Below are positions 10,397 to 64,000 of a DNA stretch of 64,000 nt, piece after piece (the stretch's first letter is position 1; each line of letters starts with the position of its first letter). Both the position numbers and the translations under genes were made by a program. Below the pieces are notes generated by a model. That model had not been told where the DNA came from and ran no database searches. It saw nothing but the letters and a program-made list of their open reading frames with translations. The stretch lies in the IMG/VR virus record IMGVR_UViG_3300046005_000547, positions 170,736-234,735 of that record; one strand, 5' to 3'.

Positions 10397-10424
10397 ATTA
10401 TAATCTATTATATCAGAAACGAAA
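10397..10424 (-). promoter_or_regulatory. Early-type promoter
   Basis: TTTCGT-N16-TATAAT on minus strand. Confidence 0.6.
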
Positions 10425-10433
10425 GAATAAAGA

Positions 10434-10538
10434 TATAATACATCTTATTTGTTGAATACACAACGAAAACAATACATCCTGTATGATATATTGTTCTAAT
10501 CATTAACATTGTTTAAACGACAAATAAGATGTATTATA
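10434..10538. repeat. Dispersed ~105 bp inverted-repeat element, copy H1 (divergent)
   Basis: Perfect 19-bp arms TATAATACATCTTATTTGT (10434-10452) / ACAAATAAGATGTATTATA (10520-10538) with ATCCTGTA core. Confidence 0.85.
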
Positions 10539-10555
10539 ACTGATATTTTATCCAA

Positions 10556-10585
10556 AAGAAATCCCATCATTTTATTGATGGGATT
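10556..10585 (-). terminator. Intrinsic terminator
   Basis: AATCCCATCA/TGATGGGATT stem, A-tract on + strand. Confidence 0.8.
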
Positions 10586-22023: not shown

Positions 22024-22500
22024 TTATAATCCCATTGATTTAGCTGTTGACACAAATTTCATTAGATTACCAAATGATTCTTTACAGAATTCTTGAAATT
22101 TCATTCTCGTTTCTGGTTTGATTTTATTTGAACGTAATGCTCTGATAGCAACACCGGCGGATCTAGTGTCAACTCGTCTTGATGTCCCGTCTTTGAAGAA
22201 CACTTTATGATTTTTATTGGTACAATTTCTTAATTGAGAGATGATGTTATCGAATACAAGTTCATTACCACAAATCATTTCAACTTCTTCGTCTACGTTT
22301 TTTGTTACAGGAGGAACTTTATAATAATCTTTGGCAATTTTATTTTCACTCATCCATGTTTTAACGGATGCTGGAATTTCAGATAACCCCAATAGAGAAG
22401 ATACATGTTCAAAAACTTCTTCATGTAATCCATGGTCAAATTTAGAATCAGATTTGTAGTAAAATGTAGTGACGATTGATAAGAATGTATTTTTGTCCAT
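22024..22500 (-). CDS. Hypothetical protein, paralog family with 24985-25485 and 26667-27335
   Basis: Shared W..EN....YY..P and F.DGTS..VD...KPE.R...SF.NL blocks. Confidence 0.7.
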   Translation of the reverse strand: MDKNTFLSIVTTFYYKSDSKFDHGLHEEVFEHVSSLLGLSEIPASVKTWMSENKIAKDYYKVPPVTKNVDEEVEMICGNELVFDNIISQLRNCTNKNHKVFFKDGTSRRVDTRSAGVAIRALRSNKIKPETRMKFQEFCKESFGNLMKFVSTAKSMGL

Positions 22501-23446: not shown

Positions 23447-24172
23447 ATGAAAGCATTATCTATTGGTATCAACAAATACAACGTAGCACCTCTGAGAGGT
23501 TGTATAACAGATTCTAATGATTTAACAACAGAATTGATTGAAAGGGGATTTGATGTATCGAGGTTGTTAGACGAACAAGCAACCAAATCAAACATTATTG
23601 AAAAGATGCATCAATTATTGTCTGAATCCAAAACAAAATTCATTTTACATTATTCTGGACACGGTTCACAGATCCCATGTTCAAATGGTTCGGAAGAAGA
23701 TGGATTGACTGAAATCCTATGTCCATTCGATTTAATCAATTCAGACGGTTCATGGACATCCAATTATATCACAGATGATGAAATACAACAATTGTTCTCA
23801 GAGTTTCCTGATATTCATATAGAAGTTATTCTTGATTGTTGCCATTCAGGAACCGCAACTAGAGATATTAAACCAACATCCATTACTCCTAGATTCATAC
23901 AATCTCCTGTTATAAATTCATCTAAGAATATTCCATTCGGAGTATCTAATGATAATGTAATCTGTTGGAGCGGATGCACCGATAATCAGACGGCAGCTGA
24001 CTCGTTCATCGACGGGAAATACAGGGGAGCATTTACCACAGCATTTTTGACTGCTTCTGGTAACAGAGAAATAATGTTTAAGAATATTACGGATTACATG
24101 ATTAAGAATGGATATGAACAACGACCAGTCTTAACTTGTACAGATAAACAAAGGACAGAATCAATGTTCTAA
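23447..24172 (+). CDS. Metacaspase / caspase-family (C14) peptidase
   Basis: ALSIGINKY..LRGCITD; HYSGHGSQ (His); ILDCCHSGT (Cys); GAFT; AGGAG RBS and TTAAATA upstream. Confidence 0.93.
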   Translation: MKALSIGINKYNVAPLRGCITDSNDLTTELIERGFDVSRLLDEQATKSNIIEKMHQLLSESKTKFILHYSGHGSQIPCSNGSEEDGLTEILCPFDLINSDGSWTSNYITDDEIQQLFSEFPDIHIEVILDCCHSGTATRDIKPTSITPRFIQSPVINSSKNIPFGVSNDNVICWSGCTDNQTAADSFIDGKYRGAFTTAFLTASGNREIMFKNITDYMIKNGYEQRPVLTCTDKQRTESMF

Positions 24173-24210
24173 AGAAATGGGATAGAATGTAAAGTTCTAT
24201 CCCATTTTTA
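24172..24210. terminator. Intrinsic terminator
   Basis: AAATGGGATAGAA/TTCTATCCCATTT followed by TTTT. Confidence 0.8.
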
Positions 24211-24301
24211 TTAATGAATCATTGCTATCGAGCCGATTATGTAAATCAATATAGATGTTACAACCCAGCAAGATACAAACAATACTCCATTTATAATTCT
24301 C

Positions 24302-24988
24302 TTAATCATATTTGAATTCCTTTATATTATTTGCGTTCATCAACAATTCTTCTATTTCATGTATGTCTGGAAACTTATTGTCTACATTCAGAATAGGATA
24401 CATCGTCAATTCATTATTTTCATACATTGAATTACATTTAGTTCTTAATTGGAGTTCCTTACTTTGTAATTCATCTTTACTCAATTTCTGATAACGTCCA
24501 ATATCATTTAATTCTGGTAATCTACCCTCCAATAGACATTCAGCAACGTAAAGACATCTTGAAATATGAAATGATTTTCGATTCTTTTTATCTTTACTTG
24601 TATTCAATAATTTCAAATCAAATTTAGCTCTACCGACGAATCCTTTTATAATTTTGTACGTTCTACATGTTAATAATTTATCCGAATTCGTTATGTCTGT
24701 GAATAACACCAATTCAGCAAAAATGTTAGATTCACCAGATAATAAATTTTTGTAAAACGTAGATTCAGTTGTCAACATCCATTGAGTGTTATTTTCGATG
24801 TCATCAAATTGAAAACAATGGATGTTTGGATAAATTCTATCTGAATTGAAAATATCGTCGAGTATTAAAACAATATCCTTGTCCGATTGTTCTGTATTGG
24901 TTTTATGTAAATGGGATCCAAACGTATATCTAGAAATTGTATATTGTTTCAATATATCAAATTGTTCTTTTGTAATTTTTATGTTCAT
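24302..24988 (-). CDS. Pol-beta-family nucleotidyltransferase (RlaP/YcgL-like)
   Basis: FGSHLHKTNTEQSDKDIV (GS...SDxD). Confidence 0.7.
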   Translation of the reverse strand: MNIKITKEQFDILKQYTISRYTFGSHLHKTNTEQSDKDIVLILDDIFNSDRIYPNIHCFQFDDIENNTQWMLTTESTFYKNLLSGESNIFAELVLFTDITNSDKLLTCRTYKIIKGFVGRAKFDLKLLNTSKDKKNRKSFHISRCLYVAECLLEGRLPELNDIGRYQKLSKDELQSKELQLRTKCNSMYENNELTMYPILNVDNKFPDIHEIEELLMNANNIKEFKYD

Positions 24989-25485
24989 TTTTCTCCTTTC
25001 ATCATTTCTCTGTTTAATTCAACCACTTTCAATAGATTGTTATAATTTTCGGAGACGTAATTCTGTAATTCAAACCTATTTTCTGGTTTGATGTATTCAT
25101 CCGTTAAGATTGAATATAATTCTTTTAATGTACGTTTGTCGATCTTCTTGGAGGTTCCATCTGTAAATTTGATTTCATTATTATATCGAATTGCTTTATT
25201 ACATTGGATGATAATAGGTTCTAATGGTTTTGGTTGTTTCTTCAGATTAAGGTATTGTTGAACAAAAATATCAACATCTTCTTCGATCTTGGGGATTTCA
25301 TAGAATCCTTTTGAACGAGTATTTTCTTTCATCCATTGTTTGATTCCTTTGGGTGATGGGATGTTAAGATATTCATTTGTTTCTTGGAAGAAATACTCTG
25401 GGATACCGCCTGAATTCTGCGTATCTGATAAGAAGTAAATTGATGAGATTAGAGATAGGTATTGATTAAGTGATAATTCTTTCAT
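24985..25485 (-). CDS. Hypothetical protein, paralog family
   Basis: WMKEN...FYEIP; FTDGTSKKID; KPENR; YNNLL. Confidence 0.7.
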   Translation of the reverse strand: MKELSLNQYLSLISSIYFLSDTQNSGGIPEYFFQETNEYLNIPSPKGIKQWMKENTRSKGFYEIPKIEEDVDIFVQQYLNLKKQPKPLEPIIIQCNKAIRYNNEIKFTDGTSKKIDKRTLKELYSILTDEYIKPENRFELQNYVSENYNNLLKVVELNREMMKGEK

Positions 25486-25499
25486 TATTGTATTTGTTT

Positions 25500-26200
25500 A
25501 ATTGTTAGTATAATGTATTAGATATAATCGAAAAAGAGTCTTGAAGTAATATAGAAAATAATAAAAGAATATTAAAATGAAACAATAGAACTAACTCAAA
25601 CCGTCGACATAGTCTAGTATACTGGGTTTTTATCGATTTCGAAAGGAGTAATTAGACGTTGATTATTACACATTCGATAACCTTGGTCTCTTTCGATACG
25701 TGATTATAATTGTTTCGATGTTAATGTTTAATTTAACAGTCTATATTGTTGTTTTAAGATGTATTAAATGTATCCTGTAGAGTTGATTGACATAATAAGG
25801 AAAGATTCCATTAGAGCGGATTATTGGACAAATAATGGATGTTAATGATTCAACATAGAATTGATATATTGTAAATTTCAAACAATAAAAATCCCGACAG
25901 AATTGTTCATTCTTATCGGGATCTGAGACTCAGAGATTTTATGTTGAATTATTGTATAGAATATATTCGATAAAGACATTAATATACTCTATAAAGAATC
26001 TAATAGTAATATAAAAGAATATAGAAAAACAATAGATACACTAACTGAAACGTCGACATAGTCTAGTATACTGTATTTTTTATCATTTCGAAAGGAGTAA
26101 TTAGACTCTGTAATAATCATATTTATTCGATATCCAGTCAATCTTAAGACGTATTCGATGTTCCTTTCGATACATGATATAATCAGTTTCGATGAATAAC
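25500..26200. repeat. Tandem cassette array A: two GTCGACATAGTCTA-anchored units, period 449 bp
   Basis: Anchors at 25603 and 26052; minus-strand promoters TTTCGA-N17-TATACT at 25616-25644 and 26065-26093; hairpin element 25738-25841; terminator 25884-25923. Confidence 0.9.
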
Positions 26201-26488
26201 TTCGATAGATTCAATCTTAACATTATTTGATTTACGTCTATCCAACATATATTCATTGACATTTAATCTAACGAAATTCTCCGATCCTGATACAATCTTA
26301 AATTTACAGATAATATCATATCGACCATCAACCAAGTTTGAATTGTTAAAATTACCGTCAGTTACTCGTTTTAATATGAAGTCAATGTTTGGACTGAACC
26401 ATTTGAATCTCTTGGTAAAATCCAATCTATCTTTTGAATTTTCATATTCCTTCAAACACATCGCTCTGTACATTATCATATCCATCAT
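26183..26488 (-). CDS. Hypothetical protein sitting inside the repeat scaffold
   Basis: RBS+ATG supplied by left end of hairpin element H3; 3' end overlaps TTCGA boxes. Confidence 0.7.
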   Translation of the reverse strand: MMDMIMYRAMCLKEYENSKDRLDFTKRFKWFSPNIDFILKRVTDGNFNNSNLVDGRYDIICKFKIVSGSENFVRLNVNEYMLDRRKSNNVKIESIEVIHRN

Positions 26489-26491
26489 TTA

Positions 26492-26587
26492 ATCCATCTT
26501 ATTTGTCGTTTAAACAACGTTTCCATTATATCCTGTAGAGTTGATTGACAATATCAATAATCGTCAACTATGGACAAATAATGTCCA
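26492..26587. repeat. Inverted-repeat element copy H3
   Basis: Core TCCTGTAGAGTTGATTGACA at 26531-26550; arms TCCATCTTATTTGTC / GACAAATAATGTCCA. Confidence 0.85.
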
Positions 26588-26619
26588 TAATACAATAGGA
26601 ATAATAAACCTTTACGCAT

Positions 26620-26656
26620 AAAAAAATCCTAATCAACTTTTCAGCCGATTAGGATC
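26620..26656 (-). terminator. Intrinsic terminator
   Basis: ATCCTAATC/GATTAGGAT stem with A7 tract on + strand. Confidence 0.75.
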
Positions 26657-26666
26657 GTATTAACAA

Positions 26667-27335
26667 TTATTTGTTTTGTTCAATAAGTTCCAACAAATTA
26701 TTGTAAGATTGACCACTATATGTTTGGAATGTCAATCTATGTTCAGTTTTGTAATCTTCAGAAGTCAATAAATCAACACCAGCTTGAGCAATTTCTCTTG
26801 GAACAATCAATGATTCGCCATTTTCAAACACGGTTTTAATAGTTGATTCCGAATCAATAGATTTATACAACTGGATTAAAATGTTTGAGAATTTTTGTTC
26901 TTCTTCGTCTTCCTCAACAATTTCGGTATCAATGATTTCTTCTTCAATATCGTCATCACCTTCTCTGTTGGTTTCATCAACCAAATCTTTCAAAATTTGA
27001 ATACCTTTTTGAAATTGAACTTGTTTAACATCAACAGTTTTTACGTCAGTTGGTTTTTTAACGGTGGTTCTTAATCTAGAACCATTAATAATGTCAGTCA
27101 AATCAACAACGATTTCAGGCAATTTGTACATTCCAACATCAGCACGATTATCTTTGAACCATTGATTTGCGCATTTAGGTGGTGAAGTTCTCCCCAACAA
27201 ATAGTTTGTTTCAAGAACCATTGGTTTAGTGATGAAAGGAACTTCTTTAGTTGAATTGTCCCAAACATAACGCAAGATTGAAGTGTATAATTCAACTGTG
27301 TTTCTTCTTTCAGTTTTGTTTTCAACGTTTGACAT
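26667..27335 (-). CDS. Hypothetical protein, paralog family (with acidic linker)
   Basis: QWFKDN...MYKLP; FENGES; YNNLL. Confidence 0.7.
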   Translation of the reverse strand: MSNVENKTERRNTVELYTSILRYVWDNSTKEVPFITKPMVLETNYLLGRTSPPKCANQWFKDNRADVGMYKLPEIVVDLTDIINGSRLRTTVKKPTDVKTVDVKQVQFQKGIQILKDLVDETNREGDDDIEEEIIDTEIVEEDEEEQKFSNILIQLYKSIDSESTIKTVFENGESLIVPREIAQAGVDLLTSEDYKTEHRLTFQTYSGQSYNNLLELIEQNK

Positions 27336-27364
27336 GATAATCCGCCTTATAATATAGTTTGTTT

Positions 27365-27424
27365 AAAGTTCATTGGATTCTTCCAACTTGAACTCTATTA
27401 TAGTGGTTATCTTAATCATCGAAA
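27365..27424 (-). promoter_or_regulatory. Early promoter plus 5' stem-loop leader (PeSL-like)
   Basis: TTTCGA-N16-TATAAT at 27397-27424; 27365-27402 identical to 55430-55467. Confidence 0.8.
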
Positions 27425-27431
27425 GAGATTT

Positions 27432-28637
27432 CTATAACTCGTACAAAGAAATATTTTTATCTTCGTTACCCGTAAATTTTAACATATTTCTAGGATTATA
27501 TTTTGTTTCGAATTCTATTCTTTCTTTTTCGTCAAACCATTCATTATAATGGGAAACGCACAATTTTCCTCCAATTGATTTTTCTAAATTAAACCCCATT
27601 ATTTCTCTGGAGTTTGGTTCGTCTTTGTAATAAGTGTGGGTGTCAAAATTCAATCCTTTATCATATAATGCACTAGAATATTCTTTTTTTGTTTTTGCGA
27701 ATTCTTTCGCAAATTTACCTTTCGTATTCATAGCGATTACGAAAGGTTTAAAATTTATTTCACCTTCCCAAGAATAATATAATTTATCGTATAATTCTGC
27801 GATTTTATTGGTATTTACGTACAATTGGTAGAATAAAGGATTATGTTTTATCGTTTTTCTTAATTGACATAAACAAGTTTCTAAATTATAAATATCGATA
27901 TGGATTATAGAATTATCGTTACAATAATGATATATTTCTTTAACCTTTTCTTCGAAAAATAATAATCTATTTATGTCCGTATTTTTTGTTTTTTTAATTA
28001 TTTGCCATTCTTCTTTATTTAAAACCCAACAAAGAGCATTCCATTGCGACCAACTATTTTGGTTTTCCAACTGTAATTCCGGTATATCTATATCATAATC
28101 GAAAAACTCATACATCATTTGTTTCGTTAACCAAACCCCCATTCTACCGTATCCATGTAAACTTTGTAATTCTTCGGTTAAATTATTGAAATTAGTTATA
28201 GGATTTCCAGTTTTGGTTAATTTTTCAAAATGTTCGATTATGTCAATGTTTTCGTATCGTTCTTTTAAATCTTTAAATAATCCGACAAAATTCCTATAAC
28301 ATTTCAAAGTATCAGTCGCGTAGAAACATCTTTTCGAATTATTTTCAACGAATTCGTTTATTTCTTCTACAGAAGTTTCTAAAAAATTAGGAAACTTCTG
28401 TAGAATTATCATTGGCCAATGACTCCGATAAGATTGACCAAAAATTAAGCAATAAAAAAGTTTTTGTTTATCTGTTAAATTCATTTCGGAAGCGATAACT
28501 TTACCATGGTGCCAATGATCTATATCTCCTTCTAACATTAAAACGTTTGTATACCTTCTAAACAATTCCATTCTATTTTCAGGTAATCTCCAATCTTTAT
28601 AATTCGATTCTTCTAATTCATAATCAAATAAACTCAT
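27432..28637 (-). CDS. Second aGPT-Pplase / amino-acid:DNA transferase
   Basis: DWRLPENRMELF; EGDIDH; LHGYGRMGVWL; NLETCLCQLRK; immediately downstream of a TET/JBP gene. Confidence 0.7.
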   Translation of the reverse strand: MSLFDYELEESNYKDWRLPENRMELFRRYTNVLMLEGDIDHWHHGKVIASEMNLTDKQKLFYCLIFGQSYRSHWPMIILQKFPNFLETSVEEINEFVENNSKRCFYATDTLKCYRNFVGLFKDLKERYENIDIIEHFEKLTKTGNPITNFNNLTEELQSLHGYGRMGVWLTKQMMYEFFDYDIDIPELQLENQNSWSQWNALCWVLNKEEWQIIKKTKNTDINRLLFFEEKVKEIYHYCNDNSIIHIDIYNLETCLCQLRKTIKHNPLFYQLYVNTNKIAELYDKLYYSWEGEINFKPFVIAMNTKGKFAKEFAKTKKEYSSALYDKGLNFDTHTYYKDEPNSREIMGFNLEKSIGGKLCVSHYNEWFDEKERIEFETKYNPRNMLKFTGNEDKNISLYEL

Positions 28638-28767
28638 TATTTTTTTCCTTTATCTTATTTGGTTTAATCTTCATTTAGAAATCTATTTAATAATATATTT
28701 GCGTTCGCTGTTATATCTCCAGTAAAACGAAAAATGGAGAAACCCGTTAAGGTCTCTCCAATCTTAT

Positions 28768-30138
28768 TTAAAAGAATTCATCCAATGATGTAGATTCAAA
28801 TTCATCTTTAAGGTCTTGATGATATTCATCAATCCATTGTTGCCCTTTCTCATGTTCTAATAAGAAATCGTACCATTCTTTCGATGTCCACATTTTTTGG
28901 AAAACGCCGTTCCAAAGTGGGCGCCATAATGGATGCGTCTCATCTTTACGTCTGGTGTCAACAAACAAACGTCTATAATCTTCATATTCCTTTGAACCCA
29001 GACCCAACATGTCTTCTCTGAAATAAGCAATAACAGAAATACGTTCACCACCTTCTTCGGTTTGAATGAATTCAGTGTTTCCATGTAAAATTTCATGATT
29101 ATTGATTAAACATAAATCTCTTGGTCTAATGTTAACTGCAATTCTATATGCAGGAAACACTAGATAACAACCTTCATAATTCTCATTTTTAGATAACACC
29201 AATAGATTTGAGAACCCTGATGTCAAATCACCGGCATCAAAATGATAATGCGTACGAAACGATTTATTTACAGTCACTGTTGTAAATACGGTTTCGGGAA
29301 TCAAAAATGCTGGATCCATTTTGTCGGCAGCTGCTCTCTGGTTACCCCATCTCCAAGGTAATAATTCCTTGAATCCTCCATTCAAACGTTTGAAAAATGG
29401 AAATGATAATTTGAATTTATCAAAATGATGGTCGGTGTATCCGGTTGCTCTACCATAAGGGATTCGTGGGTATCTTGAATACCATCCAGCAATACCAGAA
29501 TATGCTGGAGCAGCATAAACTGTATTAGACACCCAATTTTTCATTACAAATAATGCTCGTTCTTTGGCATCTTCTTGGTCCATGGATTCTAATTCTGAAA
29601 CCAATTCATCAAATTTAAAATTGTCTGGAGTTTTATTAGTCAACCATACAGAAGTTCTTAAACCGTTGTTAGATGAATTATCTTGTTGTTTGAGTTGTTC
29701 TAATGGATCCGAACCGTCTAATGTACTTGTTCTATCAATAAAGTATTCTAAAATATCATGTTGACGTTTAGTGAATCGTTCGCGTCGTTCATTATCTGTT
29801 ATTTCTTCTAACATACCAGCAGCAAGTCCGCGATTGTTAGATAATACAGCAGCATCTCTTAATCCGCCGTACGCTCCATCGTGTTCTTCAATAGTGAAAA
29901 ATCCTTTACGATATTTAAATGCGATACGCCGTTCATCAGAACCTTTATCGCATGAATTACATTCAGATACACAAGTTGCTTTGGTTGATAAATCGCATAA
30001 TGGTTCCATGTATACATCAACGTCTTCGTCGATATCTCCCCCAGGTCCAATTAAAATATCATAATGAGATCTATCTGCACCATGACCCAATAGGTGGTCT
30101 ACGTTATGTTTTTCTTTTGCTACAATAATTCTTGCCAT
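28768..30138 (-). CDS. TET/JBP-family 2OG-Fe(II) dioxygenase, paralog A
   Basis: PETVFTTVTVNKSFRTHYHFDAGD (HxD); ILHGNT; ERISVIAYFRE; YPRIPYGRAT. Confidence 0.9.
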   Translation of the reverse strand: MARIIVAKEKHNVDHLLGHGADRSHYDILIGPGGDIDEDVDVYMEPLCDLSTKATCVSECNSCDKGSDERRIAFKYRKGFFTIEEHDGAYGGLRDAAVLSNNRGLAAGMLEEITDNERRERFTKRQHDILEYFIDRTSTLDGSDPLEQLKQQDNSSNNGLRTSVWLTNKTPDNFKFDELVSELESMDQEDAKERALFVMKNWVSNTVYAAPAYSGIAGWYSRYPRIPYGRATGYTDHHFDKFKLSFPFFKRLNGGFKELLPWRWGNQRAAADKMDPAFLIPETVFTTVTVNKSFRTHYHFDAGDLTSGFSNLLVLSKNENYEGCYLVFPAYRIAVNIRPRDLCLINNHEILHGNTEFIQTEEGGERISVIAYFREDMLGLGSKEYEDYRRLFVDTRRKDETHPLWRPLWNGVFQKMWTSKEWYDFLLEHEKGQQWIDEYHQDLKDEFESTSLDEFF

Positions 30139-31596: not shown

Positions 31597-31626
31597 TTCT
31601 TATACTCTTAAAATTAACATATTTCT

Positions 31627-31654
31627 ATTATACTTTATAAAACGAAATAAGAAA
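31627..31654 (-). promoter_or_regulatory. Early-type promoter
   Basis: TTTCTT-N16-TATAAT. Confidence 0.55.
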
Positions 31655-31659
31655 GAATC

Positions 31660-32633: not shown

Positions 32634-33995
32634 TTATCCCATTAGATCTTCTAATGAAACTGATTCGAATTTGTCTTTTAAATCTTGATGATATTCATCT
32701 AACCATTGTTGTCCTTTATCGTGAATCAATAAGAAATCATACCATTCTTTTGAGTCAAACATATGAGGATAAACCCCATTAAAGAATTCATGCCATTTTG
32801 GATTTGTTTTATCATGTTTAGAATTTTCAACAAATTGTTTTCTATGGTCTTCATATTCTTTAGAACCACATTCTAACAATCCATGTCTAAAATATGAGAT
32901 GACGCTTACTCTATGTGCATCTGGTTCATTTTTGATAATTTTTGTATTACCATGCATGATTTTACTATTATCGACAATTAACAAATCTCCTGGTCTTACA
33001 TTAACAGCAATTCTATATTCAGGGAATACTAGATACCCACCAGAGTAATTATCATTGTTAGATAATACCAACAAATTAGAAATAGCATCCTGTAAATTGG
33101 CTGCATCGAAGTGGCAACCCGTAACCCACGTGTTATTTACAGTTAGAGTGGTGAACACTGTTTCGGGAATCAAAAATGCTGGATCGATTTTATCTGTGGC
33201 ATCTTTTTGTAATTGCCATCTTCTTGGCATTAAATCTCTGAATCCTCGATTTAATGACTGGATAAATGGGTAACATTTTTTAAATTTATCAAAATGATGG
33301 TCTGTATAAGCAGTAGCTCTACCATAAGGTTGACGAGGATATCTACTCCACCACCCACAAACTCCACTCATGGCAGGAACCGCCATTGACGTTCCAGATA
33401 CATGTTTCTTATGGATTCGGATAGCTTCTGCTTGAGCATCTTCTCTACTCATCTTTGATAATGAATCCACCCATGATTCAAAATCAAACATTTCCTCACC
33501 ATACAGAACCCAGACGACACCCTTTGTTACAGTGGTATCATCTTTACGTTTCCGTAATTCAGATAATGTATCGTCATCATATAATGAATCTAACGGATTC
33601 ATGAAGTAATCAAAGATTGAACGTTGGTAATCAGATACATAATTACGTTTGGCATCTTTGTTGTTCGATTTATCGCGTTCTGTATATTTACCAGCAGCAG
33701 TTCCTCTATTGTTTGAAATAGTGGCAGCATCTTTCAATCCTTCTAATGCCATGTCTTGTTCTTCTTTTGTGAAGAAGTTCTTACGAAACTTGAACGCAAC
33801 TCTGAATTCATCAATACCTTTATCGCATGAATGACATTCAGATACACAATCAAGTTTTGTTGATAGGTCACAGACTGGTGGAGTATAAACGTCCGCATCT
33901 GATTCAATTAAAACATCATAAAATGAATCATCAATGAATGTTCCCAGTAAATGTTCACAATCAAGTTTTTCTTTTGCTACAATAATTTGAACCAT
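32634..33995 (-). CDS. TET/JBP-family 2OG-Fe(II) dioxygenase, paralog B
   Basis: PETVFTTLTVNNTWVTGCHFDAAN; IMHGNT; HRVSVISYFRH. Confidence 0.9.
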   Translation of the reverse strand: MVQIIVAKEKLDCEHLLGTFIDDSFYDVLIESDADVYTPPVCDLSTKLDCVSECHSCDKGIDEFRVAFKFRKNFFTKEEQDMALEGLKDAATISNNRGTAAGKYTERDKSNNKDAKRNYVSDYQRSIFDYFMNPLDSLYDDDTLSELRKRKDDTTVTKGVVWVLYGEEMFDFESWVDSLSKMSREDAQAEAIRIHKKHVSGTSMAVPAMSGVCGWWSRYPRQPYGRATAYTDHHFDKFKKCYPFIQSLNRGFRDLMPRRWQLQKDATDKIDPAFLIPETVFTTLTVNNTWVTGCHFDAANLQDAISNLLVLSNNDNYSGGYLVFPEYRIAVNVRPGDLLIVDNSKIMHGNTKIIKNEPDAHRVSVISYFRHGLLECGSKEYEDHRKQFVENSKHDKTNPKWHEFFNGVYPHMFDSKEWYDFLLIHDKGQQWLDEYHQDLKDKFESVSLEDLMG

Positions 33996-37016: not shown

Positions 37017-37056
37017 TTGTAGATCCTCAAGTAAAGTATAAAAGTAATTACGTTCT

Positions 37057-37084
37057 ATTATACTTTACATTTAGAGATTCGAAA
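37057..37084 (-). promoter_or_regulatory. Early-type promoter
   Basis: TTTCGA-N16-TATAAT. Confidence 0.75.
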
Positions 37085-37096
37085 GAACTTTTTAGA

Positions 37097-40638: not shown

Positions 40639-40697
40639 CTCCTCTCTGTTAATATATTTCTATTATATTCATTTAGTCCAAATAAGAAAGAACTATT

Positions 40698-41556: not shown

Positions 41557-41655
41557 TTTGTTCTCCTTTGTTAAGATGGTTCTATTATACTATACTTTTT
41601 CAATATCCAAAGAAAAACCTAGCTGATATTTCTACCAACTAGGTTCTCTGATTAT

Positions 41656-42138
41656 CTATTCAATCCAAAATGACAATTTCATAATAGAATTAAATCTATA
41701 CATTTTAGAATCTTCAACTTTTATTTTCGCGCCGCAACCAATGTATATTTCATCTCCGTTTATAAATGAATTGTAAATTACATCAACCAAATTGTAATCT
41801 ATTTTCTCTCCATTTTTACAGACATCAAAATATACATTTATATGATTTGAAATTGATTCATTAGAAATCTTATATAAATCCTTACTAGAAAATGTATGAG
41901 GATTTATATACAATAAAAATTCAACAAATTTATTTTTAGAATCAACACAAAATCCAATACATTTAGATTCAATGTTACCATCAACATTTTTAAATTCTAA
42001 TGGTTTCAATTCAGAATCATCCATTTTTACAAACATAGAACGTTCGTCAATTATATAATTTTGATTTTCGATTGTATCCAATAAATTATACAAATTATCG
42101 TTACGTTCTGAATATGATTTTGTATATTTTACCAACAT
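41656..42138 (-). CDS. Hypothetical protein
   Basis: Single gene between repeated terminators. Confidence 0.65.
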   Translation of the reverse strand: MLVKYTKSYSERNDNLYNLLDTIENQNYIIDERSMFVKMDDSELKPLEFKNVDGNIESKCIGFCVDSKNKFVEFLLYINPHTFSSKDLYKISNESISNHINVYFDVCKNGEKIDYNLVDVIYNSFINGDEIYIGCGAKIKVEDSKMYRFNSIMKLSFWIE

Positions 42139-42202
42139 CAGAATTCCTATAGTAATTAAAAAAAGAAATCCTAGTTGATATTTCTACCAACTAGGTTCAA
42201 CA

Positions 42203-42814
42203 TTACAACAATTTATCTGTAATCAACATACGTTTCATCTTATGTCTATCAGTTTTACCCCAAATATCTTTATTTTTCTTTTTGAACATTTCCCATTCGT
42301 GTAAATTATCAATCTTCTCCAATTCTTTGGTTAAAAAATCAAAATAATATACGTTCAATCCTTTATTAAACGCCTTACCGATACAACGTTCCCAAAATCG
42401 TTTACCATCAAATGTTTGAATAGAATCCGTTAAAATTGTATGGTGTCGTTTCAATAAAATTTCAAAAAACATTTTAGCCGCAACACCTTCGATATAATTG
42501 TAAACTGGATTTATCCAAACTCCAGATTGCCAAACGAAATCTCCAAGTTCTATACAACTACCCAATTTATATGTCATATCGTATGTAATCAATTCTTCTT
42601 CAATATCTAATACAAAGAAATTATCTCTCCATTCGTACATATTTGAATTTGCCGATAAATTAAACGCCAATTTCTTTCTTTGTTCTTTATACAATTCCAG
42701 ATAATTTTCTCTATTTTTATCTGCATCTATTAATTCTTCTGGATCCCAACTTTTCATAATCTTTGGCATTTCCATCAACATTTTATTGTATTCTCCAAAT
42801 CTCAACATCTTCAT
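42203..42814 (-). CDS. GNAT-fold protein with capsid-targeting-like N-terminus
   Basis: MLRFGEYNKMLME/M; GVAAKMFF...ILTDSIQTFDGKRFW. Confidence 0.5.
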   Translation of the reverse strand: MKMLRFGEYNKMLMEMPKIMKSWDPEELIDADKNRENYLELYKEQRKKLAFNLSANSNMYEWRDNFFVLDIEEELITYDMTYKLGSCIELGDFVWQSGVWINPVYNYIEGVAAKMFFEILLKRHHTILTDSIQTFDGKRFWERCIGKAFNKGLNVYYFDFLTKELEKIDNLHEWEMFKKKNKDIWGKTDRHKMKRMLITDKLL

Positions 42815-42975
42815 TCCCGATAAATTAAATTTGTATTCATTATAGATTATATCTATTGTTTTCCAAAGAAAAACCTAGCTGATATTTCCACCAACTAGGT
42901 TCTCTCATCACTTTTTAAACAAATTCAAAATTGTATCTATCATGACGTATCCAATCAATACTAATGACATCCAAA

Positions 42976-54123: not shown

Positions 54124-54223
54124 CCATTATTTGTTGTTTTAAGATGGATTAGATTTATCATGTAGAGTTGATTGACATATTATGGAAACGTTCCACTAGA
54201 GTGGATTATTGGACAAATAATGG
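54124..54223. repeat. Inverted-repeat element copy H4
   Basis: Arms CCATTATTTGT (54124-54134) / ACAAATAATGG (54213-54223); core TCATGTAGAGTTGATTGACA. Confidence 0.9.
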
Positions 54224-54247
54224 AGGAATTATATGCCAATCAACGAA

Positions 54248-57899: not shown

Positions 57900-59560
57900 A
57901 TAAAGTCGAGGAAGACACTAAAAGAAAACCTAAAAACAATAGATACACTAACTCAAACCGTCGACATAGTCTAGTATATCCGAGTTTTATCGATTTCGAA
58001 AGGAGTATTCTTATCATGTAATAATCATATTCGATGCTTACGGTTATCCTTCGATGTCCTTAATGCTCTTTCGATATGTTGAATTTACAGTTTCGATGTA
58101 ATCATTAAATCCTTTCCAATTATTTGTTGTTTAAGATGGATTCATTATATCCTGTAGAGTTGATTGACATTTAACATAAAGATTCCATTAGAGTGGATTA
58201 TTGGACAAACAATAGATACATTAGGGTTGTTTTGGAATGACAATTCTGTATATTGAATCCAATAAAAATCCCAACAGAATGTTTAGTTCATATTGGGATT
58301 CTGGATGACAGAGATTTTATGTTGAATAATTGATATAATAAAGTCTATAAAATGTCTTGTGATGATATAATAAAGTCTATAAAGAGTCTTGAAGTAATAT
58401 AAAAGAATACTAAAACGAGTAAAGAACATTAATAGAACTAACTCAAACCGTCGACATAGTCTAGTATACTGGGTTTTTTATTATTTCGAAAGGAGTATAA
58501 GACGATGATTATTACACATTCGATACATTATTTCATCTTAAGATTCCGTTTCGATGTTTAATATGTTCTTTCGATATGTTGAATTTACAACTTCGATGTT
58601 CTTGTTTATTATAGACATCCATATTGTTGTTTTATGATGGATTCAATATATCCTGTAGAGTTGATTGACATATAATGGAAACGATCCATTAGAGCCCATT
58701 AACGAGCAAATAATGGATATATTAAGAATGATTCGGAACAAACATATTGTAAATTTCAAACAATAAAAATCCCACTCAGAATAAATCTGGCGGGATCTGA
58801 ATGACGGAGATTTTATGTTGAATATAGATGATTATATTATGTCGTTGTAGTAATATAATAATGTCTATAAAGAATCTAATAGTAATATAGAAGAACACTT
58901 AATGAAAGTAAAGGCAATAACTGAAACGTCGACATAGTCTACTATAATTGAATTTCGTCGAAAAGTCAAGAGAAATCTTTAGCTTGTAATAATCATATTC
59001 GATGCCTTAGATTATCGAACAATACCTTTAATGCTCTTTCGATACATGGTATCTATTGTTTCGATGTTAACATAAAATCCTGTCCAGTTATTTGCTGATT
59101 TAAGATGGAGAGATTTTATGACATAGAGTTGATTGACATAATATACAAAGATTCCATTAAGATGGAATATTGGACAAATAATGGATGTTATATGATTGGA
59201 TTGAAATCATATTATGTAAATTTTAAACAATAAAAATCCCAACAGAATGATTAGTTCACGTTGGGATGAATTATAAAGTCGATAAAGAATCTTGAAGTAA
59301 TATAGAAAACAATAAAAGAATATAGAAATGTTATTAAAGGTAATAACTGAAACGTCGACATAGTCTACTATACCCGAGTTTCTGACATTTCGAAAGGAGT
59401 TTAAGACGTTGATTATATCAAGCTCGACGTTTCGTGTATTCTTAAGACTCTTTCGATACATTGAATTTACATCTTCGATGTTAACATTTAATCCTACATG
59501 GAAATTTGCTGATTTAAGGACGATTCATTATATCCTGTAGAGTTTCCTGTCATACATAAT
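57900..59560. repeat. Tandem cassette array B: four units, no credible genes
   Basis: GTCGACATAGTCTA anchors at 57960, 58450, 58928, 59354 (periods 490, 478, 426); hairpin cores at 58150, 58651, 59119, 59533; terminators at about 58261-58300, 58762-58797, 59229-59267. Confidence 0.95.
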
Positions 59561-59629
59561 AAAAACATGTTAAATTGTATTATTGAACAAACAAATAAAT
59601 AAATAAATAAAATAACAAAAGGATAATCC

Positions 59630-62431: not shown

Positions 62432-62470
62432 TGAAAGAATCCCAGACATGTTAAAGTGTCTGGGATTTTT
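62432..62470. terminator. Intrinsic terminator
   Basis: AATCCCAGACA/TGTCTGGGATT followed by TTT. Confidence 0.85.
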
Positions 62471-62471
62471 A

Positions 62472-62645
62472 ATGGAAATTTGTTGTTTTAAGATGGAATA
62501 ATAACATCCTGTAGAGTTTATTGACATATAATGGAAACGAACAACTAGAGTCCATTAACGAACAAATAATGGATGTTTTAATATTGATTTGTGGTCAGAA
62601 TATTGTATCCAATAAAAATCCCAGTCAACTTCGGTCTTCTGGGAT
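62472..62645. repeat. Partial cassette: inverted-repeat element H9 plus the array-type terminator
   Basis: Core TCCTGTAGAGTTTATTGACA at 62507-62526; AATAAAAATCCCAG..CTTCGG..CTGGGAT at about 62611-62645. Confidence 0.85.
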
Positions 62646-62652
62646 AATATAT

Positions 62653-62955
62653 TTAGATAGATGCGATGGAACCTTTGATGATACCAATACCATGTTTTTC
62701 TAAAAATTCGGAAGGTAAATCTTGTACATGGACGATAATACCTTCTTCTCTATGGTTGAATGCACCTTTACCAGAATTTGGACTATCGACAATTTTAGCA
62801 TCAGTGATAAACAATTTAATGTAATCAGTGCCTTTGGCTGACATTTTGATTTTGAAATTTACAGGGCGACCGTCTGCGTCAACGTAAATTTGTTCACCGC
62901 TTGATGATTTAGCTTCTTCCATAACCATCGCTTGGAATTCTTTAAATGTACTCAT
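62653..62955 (-). CDS. Putative internal head protein (T4 IP-like)
   Basis: MSTFKEFQAMVME/E N-terminus; own early promoter TTTCGA-N16-TATAAT at 62987-63014. Confidence 0.55.
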   Translation of the reverse strand: MSTFKEFQAMVMEEAKSSSGEQIYVDADGRPVNFKIKMSAKGTDYIKLFITDAKIVDSPNSGKGAFNHREEGIIVHVQDLPSEFLEKHGIGIIKGSIASI

Positions 62956-63028
62956 GTTTGTTCCTTTTAATTTTAAATTAGAATCAATTATAATGATTTC
63001 GCATTATATCGAAAGACTTTAATTATAT

Positions 63029-63223
63029 TTAGTCTTTCCAATCAATCCTTAGATTGTTCTTTGTAAAGAACTTCACAACGGATGAACTAATTACATTTCT
63101 GAAACATTGATGTAATTTAAAATTAGGTATCTTAACGCCGATATTACGAGTTATCCATTCAGATACATCTTTCTCAACGTAATTAATCAATTCTCTAATC
63201 TCATGGTCTTTTAAACCATTCAT
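63029..63223 (-). CDS. Hypothetical protein
   Basis: ATGA overlap with upstream gene. Confidence 0.6.
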   Translation of the reverse strand: MNGLKDHEIRELINYVEKDVSEWITRNIGVKIPNFKLHQCFRNVISSSVVKFFTKNNLRIDWKD

Positions 63224-63690
63224 GATTCTTTAATCGGTTCAATACTGAATGAATCGAATGTCAATTTATTTCCTTGTAATTGTTTAGTTAATTCTTCGAT
63301 CTTCTGAATATCTTCATCACTTGGTTTATACTTAATCGATAAATGTGGGATGTATTCAGGATAAGAATGTTTGTATCCTAGATTACTCAATACATTATGT
63401 TGAGCAATCAAATCAGGAGATTCTAATGTCAATGTAACGGCACCCCATGTAGAACCTTTCTCACCAAGTAATTTACATCCAGCGATAATACCAACAAATT
63501 TATCATGTAATGATTCAACTTTGTATGCGGGATTAGATACATCATACATTAATGTTACATGTAAATCCTCGATGATGTCTTCAATTCCATTATCATTGAA
63601 GAAACCTCTGATACGTTTGGAATCCTCTTCCGATAATTTAACAGATACGTATCCACCATTATATTGTTTCCATTGTTCAAATGTTAACAT
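63220..63690 (-). CDS. 2H phosphoesterase, T4 gp57B/Acb1-like anti-CBASS nuclease
   Basis: GYVSVKLS; DLHVTLMY (HxT); YKHSYPEYIPHLSIKY (HxS). Confidence 0.8.
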   Translation of the reverse strand: MLTFEQWKQYNGGYVSVKLSEEDSKRIRGFFNDNGIEDIIEDLHVTLMYDVSNPAYKVESLHDKFVGIIAGCKLLGEKGSTWGAVTLTLESPDLIAQHNVLSNLGYKHSYPEYIPHLSIKYKPSDEDIQKIEELTKQLQGNKLTFDSFSIEPIKES

Positions 63691-63999
63691 TTATTTTCCT
63701 TTTAAAATGTATGAATTATTGACCAAATAAAAATTTACAAATCCTTTACTCGTTTTTTCATCAACGAATGTGAACCCCAATGAAGAATCTCTTGAAATCT
63801 TTTTAGATAATACTCTATACATAGAAACTCTGTTTGATTCTGATGTATCTGCACTAAATTGTAATTCAACAATTTCATTATGTGAATGGAAATCCTTTAT
63901 ATTAGATAATACAGTTGAAAATTTTAATGTTGCATTTCCTTTATTAGATTCATCTTGTAGATAATTATCAGAACCTTTAATTTTGAAATCAACTTCATA
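63691..63999 (-). CDS. 3' part of a hypothetical protein (start beyond window)
   Basis: Hand translation YEVDFKIKG...KFSTVLSNIKDF...LQFSAD...RVSMYRVL...ILKGK*, stop abuts the 57B-like start. Confidence 0.65.
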   Translation of the reverse strand, partial: YEVDFKIKGSDNYLQDESNKGNATLKFSTVLSNIKDFHSHNEIVELQFSADTSESNRVSMYRVLSKKISRDSSLGFTFVDEKTSKGFVNFYLVNNSYILKGK

Positions 64000-64000
64000 A

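What the first reader, a model, noticed from the sequence alone, without database searches (positions are those of the whole stretch)
25500..27424. Array A shows the same cassette scaffold both empty and filled with genes
Seen: minus-strand order promoter - transcript - terminator - hairpin element - RBS/ATG - TTCGA boxes - next promoter. Between 25603 and 26052 both slots are empty. In the next unit a 222-aa gene fills the promoter-terminator slot (26667-27335), and a 101-aa gene (26183-26488) starts at the scaffold ATG and ends within the TTCGA boxes. The same filled layout appears at 62472-63014 (IP-like gene) and 10397-10585. Established: T4-type PeSL promoter/stem-loop cassettes mediate modular gene shuffling by recombination. 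Inference: a larger two-slot gene capture and excision platform, with the empty units as vacant or deleted slots.
Basis: partly seen in the sequence, partly recalled or inferred. Interest (0 to 1): 0.75.

Follow-up and report, generated by a model that had tools for sequence, protein, structure and literature searches.

The report
Promoter-terminator repeat arrays that reshuffle a phage genome
A lake-water T4-like phage carries about 24 copies of a 450-base promoter-plus-terminator unit in seven tandem arrays, and every large rearrangement between this phage and its nearest relative has its ends in these arrays, so they act as the genome's recombination joints, not as a proven gene-capture device.

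Summary
The repeat is real. Array A (window 25521-26106, minus strand) holds one complete gene-less unit and a second promoter. The unit order is promoter, about 135-200 nt of non-coding transcript, intrinsic terminator, three conserved DNA blocks (H, B, X), then the next promoter. The 234.7-kb genome has 24 such promoters in seven arrays, 4.8% of the DNA. A 249-kb relative (G001, about 75% identical) has the same family in about eight arrays.

The 101-aa gene does sit between blocks B and X. The 222-aa gene lies between a promoter and a terminator, but that promoter belongs to another sub-family.

At array A itself both genes are conserved in the relative. What varies is the number of empty units (1 versus 3) and the DNA joined downstream.

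All six synteny breakpoints between the two genomes fall in arrays (chance about 4e-7). Units evolve in concert within each genome. Gene and cassette indels elsewhere have at least one end at a cassette edge. No site-specific recombinase is found; UvsX is present.

Best reading: an enlarged, arrayed analogue of T4-type PeSL cassettes and of the Campylobacter CP220/CP21 repeat regions, working through homologous recombination. Gene capture and excision remain unshown.

The parts
27397..27424 (-). Promoter of the 222-aa gene: TTTCGA (27424-27419), 16-nt spacer, TATAAT (27402-27397). It belongs to the dispersed D5/D6 promoter family, not the array type.
   Evidence: Sequence. Repeat family D5/D6. 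The motif class occurs 41 times against 2.2 expected.
26667..27335 (-). 222-aa gene, function unknown. It is a paralog of the 166-aa gene on the other side of the array and of the 158-aa ORF at 22024-22500.
   Evidence: It has no Pfam or PHROG hit. Its G001 ortholog is 70% identical and in the same place.
26625..26656 (-). Intrinsic terminator after the 222-aa gene: a 14-bp stem followed by a T-run.
26524..26600 (-). Degenerate block H plus block B (core TGTCAATCAACTCTACAGGATA, 26529-26550), upstream of the 101-aa gene.
   Evidence: (D7).
26183..26488 (-). 101-aa gene (phrog_22386, unknown function) lying between blocks B and X.
   Evidence: The G001 ortholog is 80% identical and sits in the same slot.
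26110..26194 (-). Block X: ATCGAA boxes about 25 nt apart. The first box directly precedes the stop codon of the 101-aa gene.
   Evidence: (D10).
26052..26093 (-). Array promoter 1: TTTCGA (26093-26088), 17-nt spacer, TATACT (26070-26065), then the invariant quasi-palindromic leader TAGACTATGTCGAC (26065-26052).
25886..26064 (-). Gene-less transcription unit (~180 nt). It has a conserved 5' leader, an A+T-rich variable body with short sub-repeats and indels, the conserved box AATTCAACATAAAATCTCTG, a terminator hairpin at 25922-25891 and a T-run at 25890-25886.
25802..25878 (-). Block H: AAATTTACA ... CCATTATTTGTCCAATAATCC ... TAATGGAA.
   Evidence: It is conserved in G001.
25753..25800 (-). 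Block B (TGTCAATCAACTCTACAGGATA). The ~50-nt linker that carries the 'scaffold ATG' region lies just downstream (about 25731-25752).
25665..25730 (-). Block X (ATCGAA boxes).
25601..25644 (-). Array promoter 2, the terminal one: TTTCGA (25644-25639), 17-nt spacer, TATACT (25621-25616), then the leader. It reads into the 166-aa gene.
24985..25485 (-). 166-aa gene served by the terminal array promoter through a leader of about 130 nt. It is a paralog of the 222-aa gene.
   Evidence: In G001 its ortholog follows a different array, at 97389-97880.
57912..59591 (-). Array B: four promoters and three complete empty units of the same family.
62487..63016 (-). Single filled cassette: promoter (about 62975-63016), 100-aa IP-like gene (62653-62955), terminator, H, B.
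   Evidence: The stretch 62651-63226 is absent from the near-identical strain G002.
54138..54231 (-). Solitary H+B pair directly upstream of the 165-aa gene, whose ATG (54117) lies at the 'scaffold ATG' position.
10397..10585 (-). Single degenerate terminator - H-like - B-like - promoter cassette between two ordinary genes.

Best explanation
The unit is a composite early-transcription cassette. Its parts are a host-sigma-type promoter of the phage's own TTTCGA-N17-TATAAT class, a 13-17-bp quasi-palindromic site at the transcription start that looks like an operator, an intrinsic terminator, and about 230-280 bp of conserved DNA (blocks H, B, X) between the terminator and the next promoter.

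The cassette occurs singly between genes. It also occurs amplified into seven tandem arrays, in which the space between promoter and terminator holds only a short non-coding transcript of roughly 135-200 nt.

The arrays are 0.7-2.2 kb of dispersed homology, in both orientations. I infer that the phage's general recombination system (UvsX-type) uses them. Unequal exchange within an array would change unit number. Exchange and gene conversion between arrays would homogenise the units. Exchange between inverted arrays would invert the 20-35-kb segments between them, and exchange between direct arrays would move segments. Cassette edges are also where small genes are gained or lost.

Shown here: the anatomy, its conservation, copy-number change, concerted evolution, breakpoints in arrays, and indels with an end at a cassette edge.

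Inferred: promoter and terminator activity in vivo, the operator role of the leader, and that UvsX-type recombination is the agent.
For: Promoter:
- TTTCGA-N16-18-TA[TC]A[ACG]T occurs 41 times in G000 against 2.2 +/- 1.8 expected. Twenty-one of these lie outside arrays, and their strand follows the local gene strand.
- Some units carry a canonical TTGACT-N17-TATAGT instead.

Terminator:
- 35 hairpins with 29 different sequences all fold (mean -14.5 kcal/mol against -3.5 for shuffles) and are followed by T-runs. This means compensatory change in the stems.

Non-coding transcript:
- The leader ORF is 4-82 aa in the 24 copies.
- There is no Rfam match and no consensus fold beyond the terminator.

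Leader as a DNA site:
- TAGACTATGTCGA occurs 24 times in G000 and 25 times in G001.
- One G001 copy has the 13-mer exactly inverted in place.

Family:
- 24 promoters lie in 7 arrays, 4.8% of G000.
- G001 has 25 promoters in about 8 arrays.

Recombination:
- Every unit's nearest relative is in its own genome, usually in another array. Identity is 70% within a genome and 57% between genomes.
- Exact patches of 90-95 nt are shared between arrays whose units average 70% identity.
- All six synteny-block junctions lie at arrays in both genomes. The chance of this is about 4e-7.
- G001 keeps the T4 order terminase - sheath - portal. G000 has that 30-kb segment inverted between the inverted arrays A1 and A2.
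- G000's own junctions are also seen in G002, which covers five of the seven arrays (A1, A2, A6, A7 and, at 93% identity, A5). A third sample's contig covers array A1.
- Array A has 1 complete empty unit in G000 and 3 in G001.
- Indels with an end at a cassette edge are listed.
- UvsX is present. No resolvase or tyrosine integrase is found.
Against: - There is no transcript or end-mapping data, so promoter, terminator and RNA are predictions. The -35 hexamer TTTCGA matches TTGACA poorly.
- Only two genomes of this lineage exist in the collections searched. G001's arrangement rests on one assembly.
- Conservation of about 24 copies in both phages, and of blocks H, B and X, suggests a selected function that 'recombination substrate' does not explain.
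- One of the two indels between G000 and G002 has its ends at two ATGTTA start codons, not at cassette modules. Not all plasticity therefore runs through cassettes.
- Logan contigs were too fragmented inside the array to show variants directly.
Confidence: 0.7

Rival explanations
1. The unit is a two-slot gene capture and excision platform. Genes enter and leave slot 1 (promoter to terminator) and slot 2 (B to X), for instance as PeSL-type mini-circles, and empty units are vacant or deleted slots.
For: - The 101-aa gene lies exactly between B and X in both genomes.
- The 165-aa gene starts at the scaffold ATG position after a solitary H-B pair.
- Empty units keep a vestigial ATGGAT, and ATCGAAGTT like the 3' end of the 101-aa gene.
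- The spacer after the promoter resembles the 5' UTR of the 166-aa gene.
- The IP-like gene with its promoter is present in G000 and absent in G002, with one end at the terminator.
- G001 has an extra gene behind a terminal promoter.
- Homologs of the 101-aa gene occur as ordinary genes in unrelated phage contigs. It therefore looks like a mobile ORFan-type gene.
Against: - Both named slots have the same genes in G001 and in the X5 relative.
- No orthologous slot is filled in one genome and empty in the other.
- In G000, 16 of the 24 promoters are followed directly by a detected unit terminator.
- The scaffold ATG is ATA in G001 units.
- There is no integrase or resolvase.
- Circles were not tested.
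Confidence: 0.3
2. The arrays are kept for a function of their own, and recombination is a by-product. Candidate functions are abundant short A+U-rich terminator-ended early RNAs (a decoy or sponge RNA), T4-type R-loop replication origins (promoter plus an easily unwound A+T-rich stretch), or an operator-controlled insulator and promoter bank at segment borders.
For: - Copy number is nearly equal in two phages that differ at 25% of bases: 24 and 25 promoters.
- Arrays persist beside the same flanking genes.
- The invariant leader site and the blocks H, B and X are conserved across both genomes, while the rest of the unit drifts to 57% identity.
- The variable body is 76% A+T against 68.5% for the genome.
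- From established T4 biology, replication origins are recombination hot spots.
Against: - There is no conserved RNA structure or covariation outside the terminator and no Rfam family.
- The RNA body varies in length and sequence (139-203 nt as extracted).
- No expression or replication data exist.
- Concerted evolution alone could keep the blocks alike.
Confidence: 0.3
3. The genome rearrangements are assembly artefacts. The assembler joined contigs wrongly at the repeats, so the arrays only look like breakpoints.
For: - Repeats are where short-read assemblers fail.
- Logan unitigs break throughout the array.
- G001's order rests on a single contig.
Against: - The longest exact repeat shared by two arrays is 92 nt in G000 and 95 nt in G001. 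That is shorter than the 127-nt overlap left at the ends of G000 by the final assembly k-mer, so paths through the arrays are unique.
- G000's order across arrays A1, A2, A5, A6 and A7 is reproduced by G002, and across A1 by a contig from a third sample.
- The differences follow the rules of recombination. Inverted arrays flank the inverted segments, and array orientation is kept.
- G001 has the canonical T4 order terminase-sheath-portal.
Confidence: 0.07
4. The empty units are decayed remains of tandemly duplicated genes (the 222/166/158-aa paralog family with its regulatory DNA). They are pseudogene arrays with no role.
For: - Paralogs flank array A on both sides.
- The spacers look like a 5' UTR joined to a terminator.
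Against: - The spacers are only about 70-115 nt between the promoter and terminator modules.
- They show no ORF remnants or frame conservation.
- The same unit occurs at seven loci with unrelated flanking genes.
- It is kept in both genomes with conserved boxes.
Confidence: 0.1

Closest known systems
PeSL (promoter-early stem-loop) cassettes of T4-type phages: RB49/phi1 and KVP40/nt-1 (Arbiol et al. 2010, PMC2839356; Comeau et al. 2014, PMC4122927)
   Same: - Both are repeated composite elements that combine an early, host-sigma-type promoter with a stem-loop terminator.
- Both are associated with small genes of unknown function and with IP-like loci.
- In both, indels between relatives end at the elements.
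- Neither has a dedicated recombinase, so homologous recombination is the presumed agent.
   Different: - Here the terminator and promoter are about 230-280 bp apart and are separated by three conserved blocks (H, B, X).
- The promoter carries an invariant quasi-palindromic site at its start point.
- The cassettes are amplified into tandem arrays of up to 5 promoters in which most inter-cassette spaces hold no gene.
- The arrays mark inversions and transpositions of 20-35-kb segments, not only ORFan indels.
- The window region gave no blastn match in the phage collection.
- Mini-circles were not tested.
Repeat regions RR1-RR4 of Campylobacter group II (CP220-like) T4-related phages CP21, CP220 and CPt10 (PMC4546147)
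   Same: - Long extragenic repeat regions (1-2.9 kb there, 0.7-2.2 kb here) divide the genome into large modules.
- The modules are inverted or re-ordered between related phages.
- Some repeat regions enclose genes.
- Copy number and structure of the regions vary.
   Different: - Units there are 72-86 bp with the core AAACTTAAAGCAA and a bipartite arm structure.
- Here the unit is ~450 nt, one-directional, and is a full promoter-transcript-terminator unit.
- The CP21 core is absent from G000: 0 hits with one mismatch allowed.
- Those phages carry transposase and homing endonuclease genes. Here no resolvase or integrase is found, and GIY-YIG gives only a sub-threshold hit.
T-even internal protein (IP) loci, with early promoters and A+T-rich stem-loops flanking variable IP genes (as discussed in PMC2839356)
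   Same: - The 100-aa gene at 62653-62955 begins MSTFKEFQAMVMEE, like a T4 IP capsid-targeting sequence (from my own knowledge of T4 IPs).
- It is flanked by a promoter and a terminator.
- It is present or absent between near-identical strains.
   Different: - Only this one locus fits.
- The arrays themselves carry no IP genes.
Integron gene-cassette platforms
   Same: There is a promoter-equipped site next to which small genes vary.
   Different: There is no integrase, no attC-like sites were identified, and most units are empty. The resemblance is only a loose analogy.

Membership tests
PeSL cassette | A sigma-70-like early promoter that is repeated through the genome | tested here: met
   The TTTCGA/TTGACT-N16-18-TATAAT-like motif occurs 41 times against 2.2 expected, with strand following gene strand. 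Activity was not measured, and the -35 hexamer is non-canonical.
PeSL cassette | A stem-loop terminator directly adjoining the promoter in one small compact motif | tested here: not met
   Terminators are real, but they lie about 230-280 nt upstream of the promoter, with blocks H, B and X in between.
PeSL cassette | Flanks non-essential ORFans in hyperplastic regions | tested here: inconclusive
   This holds for the 101-aa, 222-aa and IP-like genes. In G000, however, 16 of the 24 promoters run straight into a unit terminator with no gene between.
PeSL cassette | Indels and replacements between relatives end in the cassettes | tested here: met
   Searches show indels with an end at a cassette edge. 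Searches place the large breakpoints in arrays. One indel ends elsewhere.
PeSL cassette | Formation of mini-circles by exchange between neighbouring cassettes | not testable with these tools
   This needs outward PCR or long reads. Logan contigs were uninformative.
CP220-like repeat regions | Kilobase-long repeat regions that split the genome into modules whose order or orientation differs between relatives | tested here: met
CP220-like repeat regions | Units of 72-86 bp with the core AAACTTAAAGCAA and a bipartite arm structure | tested here: not met
   The unit here is ~450 nt and one-directional. The core is absent from G000.
Integron-like capture platform | A site-specific recombinase encoded with the platform | tested here: not met
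   PF00239 and PF00589 give no match in the complete genome, and the controls were positive.
Described structured RNA family (Rfam) | A match to a curated covariance model, or a conserved covarying fold | tested here: not met
   There is no meaningful Rfam hit. Only the terminator stem is conserved.
T4-type R-loop origin (oriF/oriG kind) | A promoter followed by an easily unwound A+T-rich element, with the transcript priming replication | tested here: inconclusive
   A promoter followed by a body of 76% A+T is present. Replication initiation cannot be tested here.

The most novel reading that the evidence does not exclude
The arrays are a selected, operator-controlled multi-copy early system, with about 24 units kept in both phages. 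On this reading the units make abundant short RNAs or R-loop origins and also serve as the designated joints at which the genome inverts and re-orders its 20-35-kb segments. The phage chromosome would then be built as a set of re-arrangeable modules, possibly existing as orientation isomers within one population.
Probability: 0.2. Interest if true: 0.8.

Novelty: new variant of a known kind. Interest (0 to 1): 0.62.

Why it matters
T4-like genomes are regarded as conserved in gene order, with plasticity confined to small hyperplastic regions. Here one repeated regulatory unit fills nearly 5% of a complete 235-kb genome. It accounts for every large difference in gene order from the nearest relative, including the separation of terminase from the sheath and portal genes.

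This links two phenomena that have been described separately: PeSL-type cassette shuffling and the module inversion seen in Campylobacter phages. It also offers a tractable sequence system for asking three questions:
- how homologous recombination shapes large phage genomes;
- whether orientation isomers coexist in one population;
- what the conserved non-promoter blocks and the start-site palindrome bind.

Tried and rejected
- blastn and tblastn of the region against 50,697 phage records gave no DNA match and no match for the 222-aa protein.
- Rfam at a permissive threshold gave only chance snoRNA hits.
- Reading the leader ATG as a small gene was rejected. The frame is 4-82 aa, and 7 of the 24 copies stop after MSTV.
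- A structured RNA in the transcript or in H-B was not supported. alifold gave -0.6 and -2.6, and nothing on the antisense strand.
- Conserved promoters inside H or B were sought by eye and by the consensus scan. None was conserved across units.
- An exact scan of viral contigs with the leader motif found only this phage in sister samples.
- The same scan of metagenome contigs found one chance hit in 52% G+C DNA.
- Laying Logan contigs of four lake runs on 24000-28900 showed the array collapsed into short high-depth unitigs. No trustworthy joints were seen, only the layout of a ~96% relative.
- More distant carriers of the 101-aa family (L011, L013, L016) have no arrays.
- Homolog searches with the 101-aa and 166-aa proteins found only G000 and G001 of this lineage on long contigs.
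- Resolvase and tyrosine integrase were absent. GIY-YIG gave only a sub-threshold match.
- The AsiA and MotA C-terminal domain searches found nothing, but their controls were silent, so they are uninformative.
- An early idea that the gene after G001's array is a paralog of the 166-aa gene was wrong. That hit was the 222-aa ortholog.
Full report
**What the window is**

The window is the last 64 kb of a complete 234,735-bp virus genome (G000). It has 31.5% G+C, and its ends carry a 127-nt overlap. It is a T4-like myovirus. It has a gp41-type helicase about 60% identical to those of Synechococcus T4-like phages. It also has UvsX, DNA polymerase, sheath, portal, terminase, baseplate wedge and topoisomerase genes. 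Public runs that hold the sequence are lake-water metagenomes. The genes next to the finding include an amino-acid:DNA transferase, two Tet/JBP oxygenases, a caspase-like peptidase and a PARP-like 933-aa protein.

Yes, in the main. The stretch 25658-26106 (minus strand) is one period of a ~450-nt unit. nhmmer finds 38 matches to it in the genome, with E from 1e-118 to 6e-6. Fifteen of these are full length.

An alignment of the 15 full units and separate module models give a fixed order:
- P: the promoter (TTTCGA, or in some units TTGACT, then 17 nt, then TATACT or TATAGT), followed at once by the invariant TAGACTATGTCGAC.
- An A+T-rich body with short sub-repeats and indels.
- The box AATTCAACAT(T)AAAATCTCTG.
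- T: the hairpin ATCCC...GGGAT followed by TTTTTATT.
- H: AAATTTACA ... CCATTATTTG..C..TAATCCA...TAATGGAA.
- B: TGTCAATCAACTCTACAGGATA.
- X: ATCGAA boxes about 25 nt apart.
- The next P.

The 101-aa gene sits between B and X. That gap is 315 nt here and about 30 nt in empty units. The 222-aa gene sits between a promoter and a terminator. Its promoter, however, belongs to another dispersed family (D5/D6) and lacks the array leader.

The locus 62487-63016 has promoter, 100-aa gene, terminator, H and B. The stretch 10397-10585 is a single degenerate cassette between two genes, not a filled two-slot unit.

**Are the parts functional signals?**

The promoter motif class occurs 41 times in G000 against 2.2 +/- 1.8 in Markov-1 random sequences. 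Twenty-one copies lie outside the arrays, on the strand of the local genes.

The terminators are 35 hairpins with 29 different sequences. All fold (mean -14.5 kcal/mol, shuffles -3.5) and all precede a T-run, so the stems have changed by compensatory substitutions.

The transcript between them is not coding. The frame opened by the leader ATG runs 4 to 82 aa. It has no conserved fold apart from the terminator and no Rfam match.

The leader is better read as a DNA site. It is a quasi-palindrome (GATnGAC TAT GTCnATC in G001). It occurs 24 and 25 times in the two genomes, at the array promoters. One G001 copy has the 13-mer exactly inverted in place behind an intact promoter. A site at the start point that works in either orientation is what an operator for a dimeric protein looks like. 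This is inference.

Block H gives only a weak 6-bp stem with no clear covariation. Block B also stands alone about 20-45 nt upstream of several gene starts, at 54138, at genome position 58225 and at 26524. It may therefore be a regulatory or promoter element, but I could not define one.

**The family in the whole genome and in a relative**

G000 has 24 P modules in seven arrays, at 41.6-43.7, 72.5-74.0, 103.9-106.1, 140.1-141.8, 161.9-163.3, 196.3-196.9 (array A) and 228.6-230.3 kb (array B). Together they total 11.2 kb, or 4.8% of the genome.

The 101-aa protein led to a 249,362-bp relative, IMG/VR UViG 3300046008_000242 (G001). It is 98% complete and about 75% identical in alignable DNA. G001 has 25 P modules in about eight arrays.

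Units are about 70% identical within a genome and only about 57% identical between genomes. Every unit's nearest neighbour is in its own genome, usually in a different array. Arrays also share exact patches of up to 92-95 nt. This is concerted evolution, meaning repeated exchange among arrays.

At array A the relative has the same genes in the same places: ADDT, the 227-aa ortholog (70% aa identity), H-B, the 112-aa ortholog (80%), then X-P. A ~96% relative in run X5 also spans the junction between the 222-aa and 101-aa genes with the same layout. Gene content at the two named slots is therefore invariant in the relatives available.

Two things differ. G001 has three complete empty units where G000 has one. 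The DNA after the array is also different: in G001 it is a 248-aa gene and then DNA ligase. In G000 the ligase follows another array, 90 kb away and on the other strand.

**Genome-scale result**

Chaining of blastn matches gives these blocks (G000 -> G001):
- 0.3-42.0 kb -> 214.7-249.4 kb and on to 0-10.4 kb, same orientation.
- 43.8-73.4 kb -> 39.8-11.1 kb, inverted.
- 73.9-103.9 kb -> 40.6-76.4 kb, same orientation.
- 105.0-140.1 kb -> 177.1-139.2 kb, inverted.
- 140.8-160.9 kb -> 97.1-77.7 kb, inverted.
- 163.3-195.0 kb -> 135.9-97.9 kb, inverted.
- 196.9-223.3 kb -> 177.1-204.9 kb, same orientation.
- 230.3-234.4 kb -> 211.2-214.7 kb, same orientation.

All six junctions lie at arrays in G000. 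Their partners lie within 0-1.5 kb of arrays in G001. The chance that six such intervals all overlap arrays is about 4e-7.

Written as segments, G000 is S1 S2 S3 S4 S5 S6 S7 S8 and G001 is S1 S2' S3 S5' S6' S4' S7 S8, where ' means inverted. This needs at least three events. Array orientations are those expected from exchange between inverted or direct arrays.

Polarity can be read for one event. G001 keeps the T4 order terminase, sheath, portal on one strand. In G000 the 30-kb sheath-to-topoisomerase segment is turned round between the inverted arrays A1 and A2.

**Could this be misassembly?**

The longest exact repeat between arrays (95 nt or less) is shorter than the 127-nt final k-mer implied by G000's terminal overlap. 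Paths through the arrays are therefore unique.

G000's order is reproduced by a second contig, G002. G002 is 149 kb, collinear and 99.8-99.9% identical over most of its length, and it covers arrays A1, A2, A6 and A7, and A5 at 93% identity. A contig from a third sample covers array A1. G001's order rests on one contig, so a small doubt remains.

**Small-scale plasticity at cassette edges**

G002 differs from G000 in a 4-kb patch of 94-97% identity (window about 59555-63700). One border of the patch is the edge of array B.

Inside the patch G002 lacks window 62651-63226. That stretch holds a 65-aa ORF, a promoter and the IP-like 100-aa gene. One end of the gap is exactly at the start of the terminator.

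G002 also lacks a gene of about 520 nt whose deletion ends at two ATGTTA start codons. That deletion is not at a cassette.

G001 has an extra gene between a terminal array promoter and the ligase. It also has a 617-nt, 1.3-unit cassette between two conserved genes where G000 has 13 nt.

The gene enclosed in array A2 is conserved inside the corresponding G001 array.

**How it most likely works**

I take the unit to be an enlarged relative-by-analogy of the PeSL cassette: an early promoter and a terminator with extra conserved DNA. It has been amplified into arrays by unequal exchange.

Because the arrays are dispersed in both orientations, the phage's homologous recombination system uses them. 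UvsX is present, and no resolvase or integrase is found. The results are copy-number change, homogenisation of units, inversion and transposition of the segments between arrays, and gene indels at cassette edges.

It is compatible with the vestigial start and end motifs in empty units and with the indels. It is not shown, because no slot differs in occupancy between orthologous positions and circles were not testable.

Both phages retain about 24 units and the blocks H, B and X, and both keep the start-site palindrome. This suggests an additional selected role, which I cannot resolve. It could be abundant early RNAs, R-loop origins, or a regulated promoter/insulator bank.

**Comparison with known systems**

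The closest known systems are:
- The PeSLs of RB49/phi1 and KVP40/nt-1 (PMC2839356, PMC4122927). The logic is the same, but those are much smaller, are not arrayed, and are known only for ORFan indels.
- The repeat regions of Campylobacter phages CP21/CP220 (PMC4546147). The genome-module behaviour is the same, but the units are unrelated and 72-86 bp long.

This case joins the two behaviours in one element and adds new anatomy, so I class it as a new variant of a known kind.

Noticed in passing
window 27432-30138 and 32634-33995; L010:2803-9086: There is a DNA hypermodification cluster of two Tet/JBP oxygenase paralogs plus an amino-acid:DNA transferase (ADDT). The ADDT is 401 aa here. In the relative G001 it is 272 aa and is preceded by a separate glutamine-amidotransferase-like gene. 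The X5 relative diverges completely upstream of 27434.
   Followed up: partly
window 62653-62955; also genome 72144-72194 (outside the window): The 100-aa protein starts MSTFKEFQAMVMEE, which resembles the capsid-targeting sequence of T4 internal proteins. A second gene just upstream of array A2 has the same N-terminus. The 100-aa gene is absent from the near-identical strain G002.
   Followed up: partly
window 59630-62431 (+): A 933-aa protein has a PARP-like ADP-ribosyltransferase domain and lies on the opposite strand, between block B of the 62.5-kb cassette and array B. It is only about 94-96% identical between strains that are otherwise 99.9% identical. In G001 it is flanked by inverted H-B pairs.
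   Followed up: partly
window 26183-26488: Language-model look-alikes of the 101-aa protein include small ADP-ribosyltransferase families (Tox-ART-HYD1, Arr, PARP). Scores are 0.91-0.93 with few shared features, so this is a lead only.
   Followed up: no
window 23447-24172 (+): A caspase-family (Peptidase_C14) gene lies on the plus strand inside a run of minus-strand genes, next to a nucleotidyltransferase-like 228-aa gene. The G001 homolog of the 228-aa gene lies elsewhere (199.8-200.4 kb).
   Followed up: no
window 41606-42919: A different 58-nt repeat with the hairpin CCTAGCTGATATTTCTACCAACTAGG occurs three times between small genes. It is a second terminator-like repeat family.
   Followed up: no
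window 31609-31657, 37039-37087, 40644-40692, 41579-41614: There is another dispersed intergenic repeat, GTTCTATTATACTTTA...GAAAGAA. On the minus strand it reads as a CTTTCT-N17-TATAAT promoter-like site.
   Followed up: no
genome 46842-49727 (L044), outside the window: The portal gene is 961 aa and has an HNH-endonuclease-like insert (residues 436-518). This may be an intein or a homing-endonuclease insertion.
   Followed up: no
G001 about 10501 (minus strand); L021: One array promoter in the relative has the 13-bp start-site motif exactly inverted in place (TCGACATAGTCTA). This looks like a quasi-palindrome template-switch event.
   Followed up: yes
window 63694-64000 continuing to genome 128-340: A gene of about 520 nt is present in G000 and absent from G002. 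The deletion runs precisely from one ATGTTA start codon to the next.
   Followed up: partly
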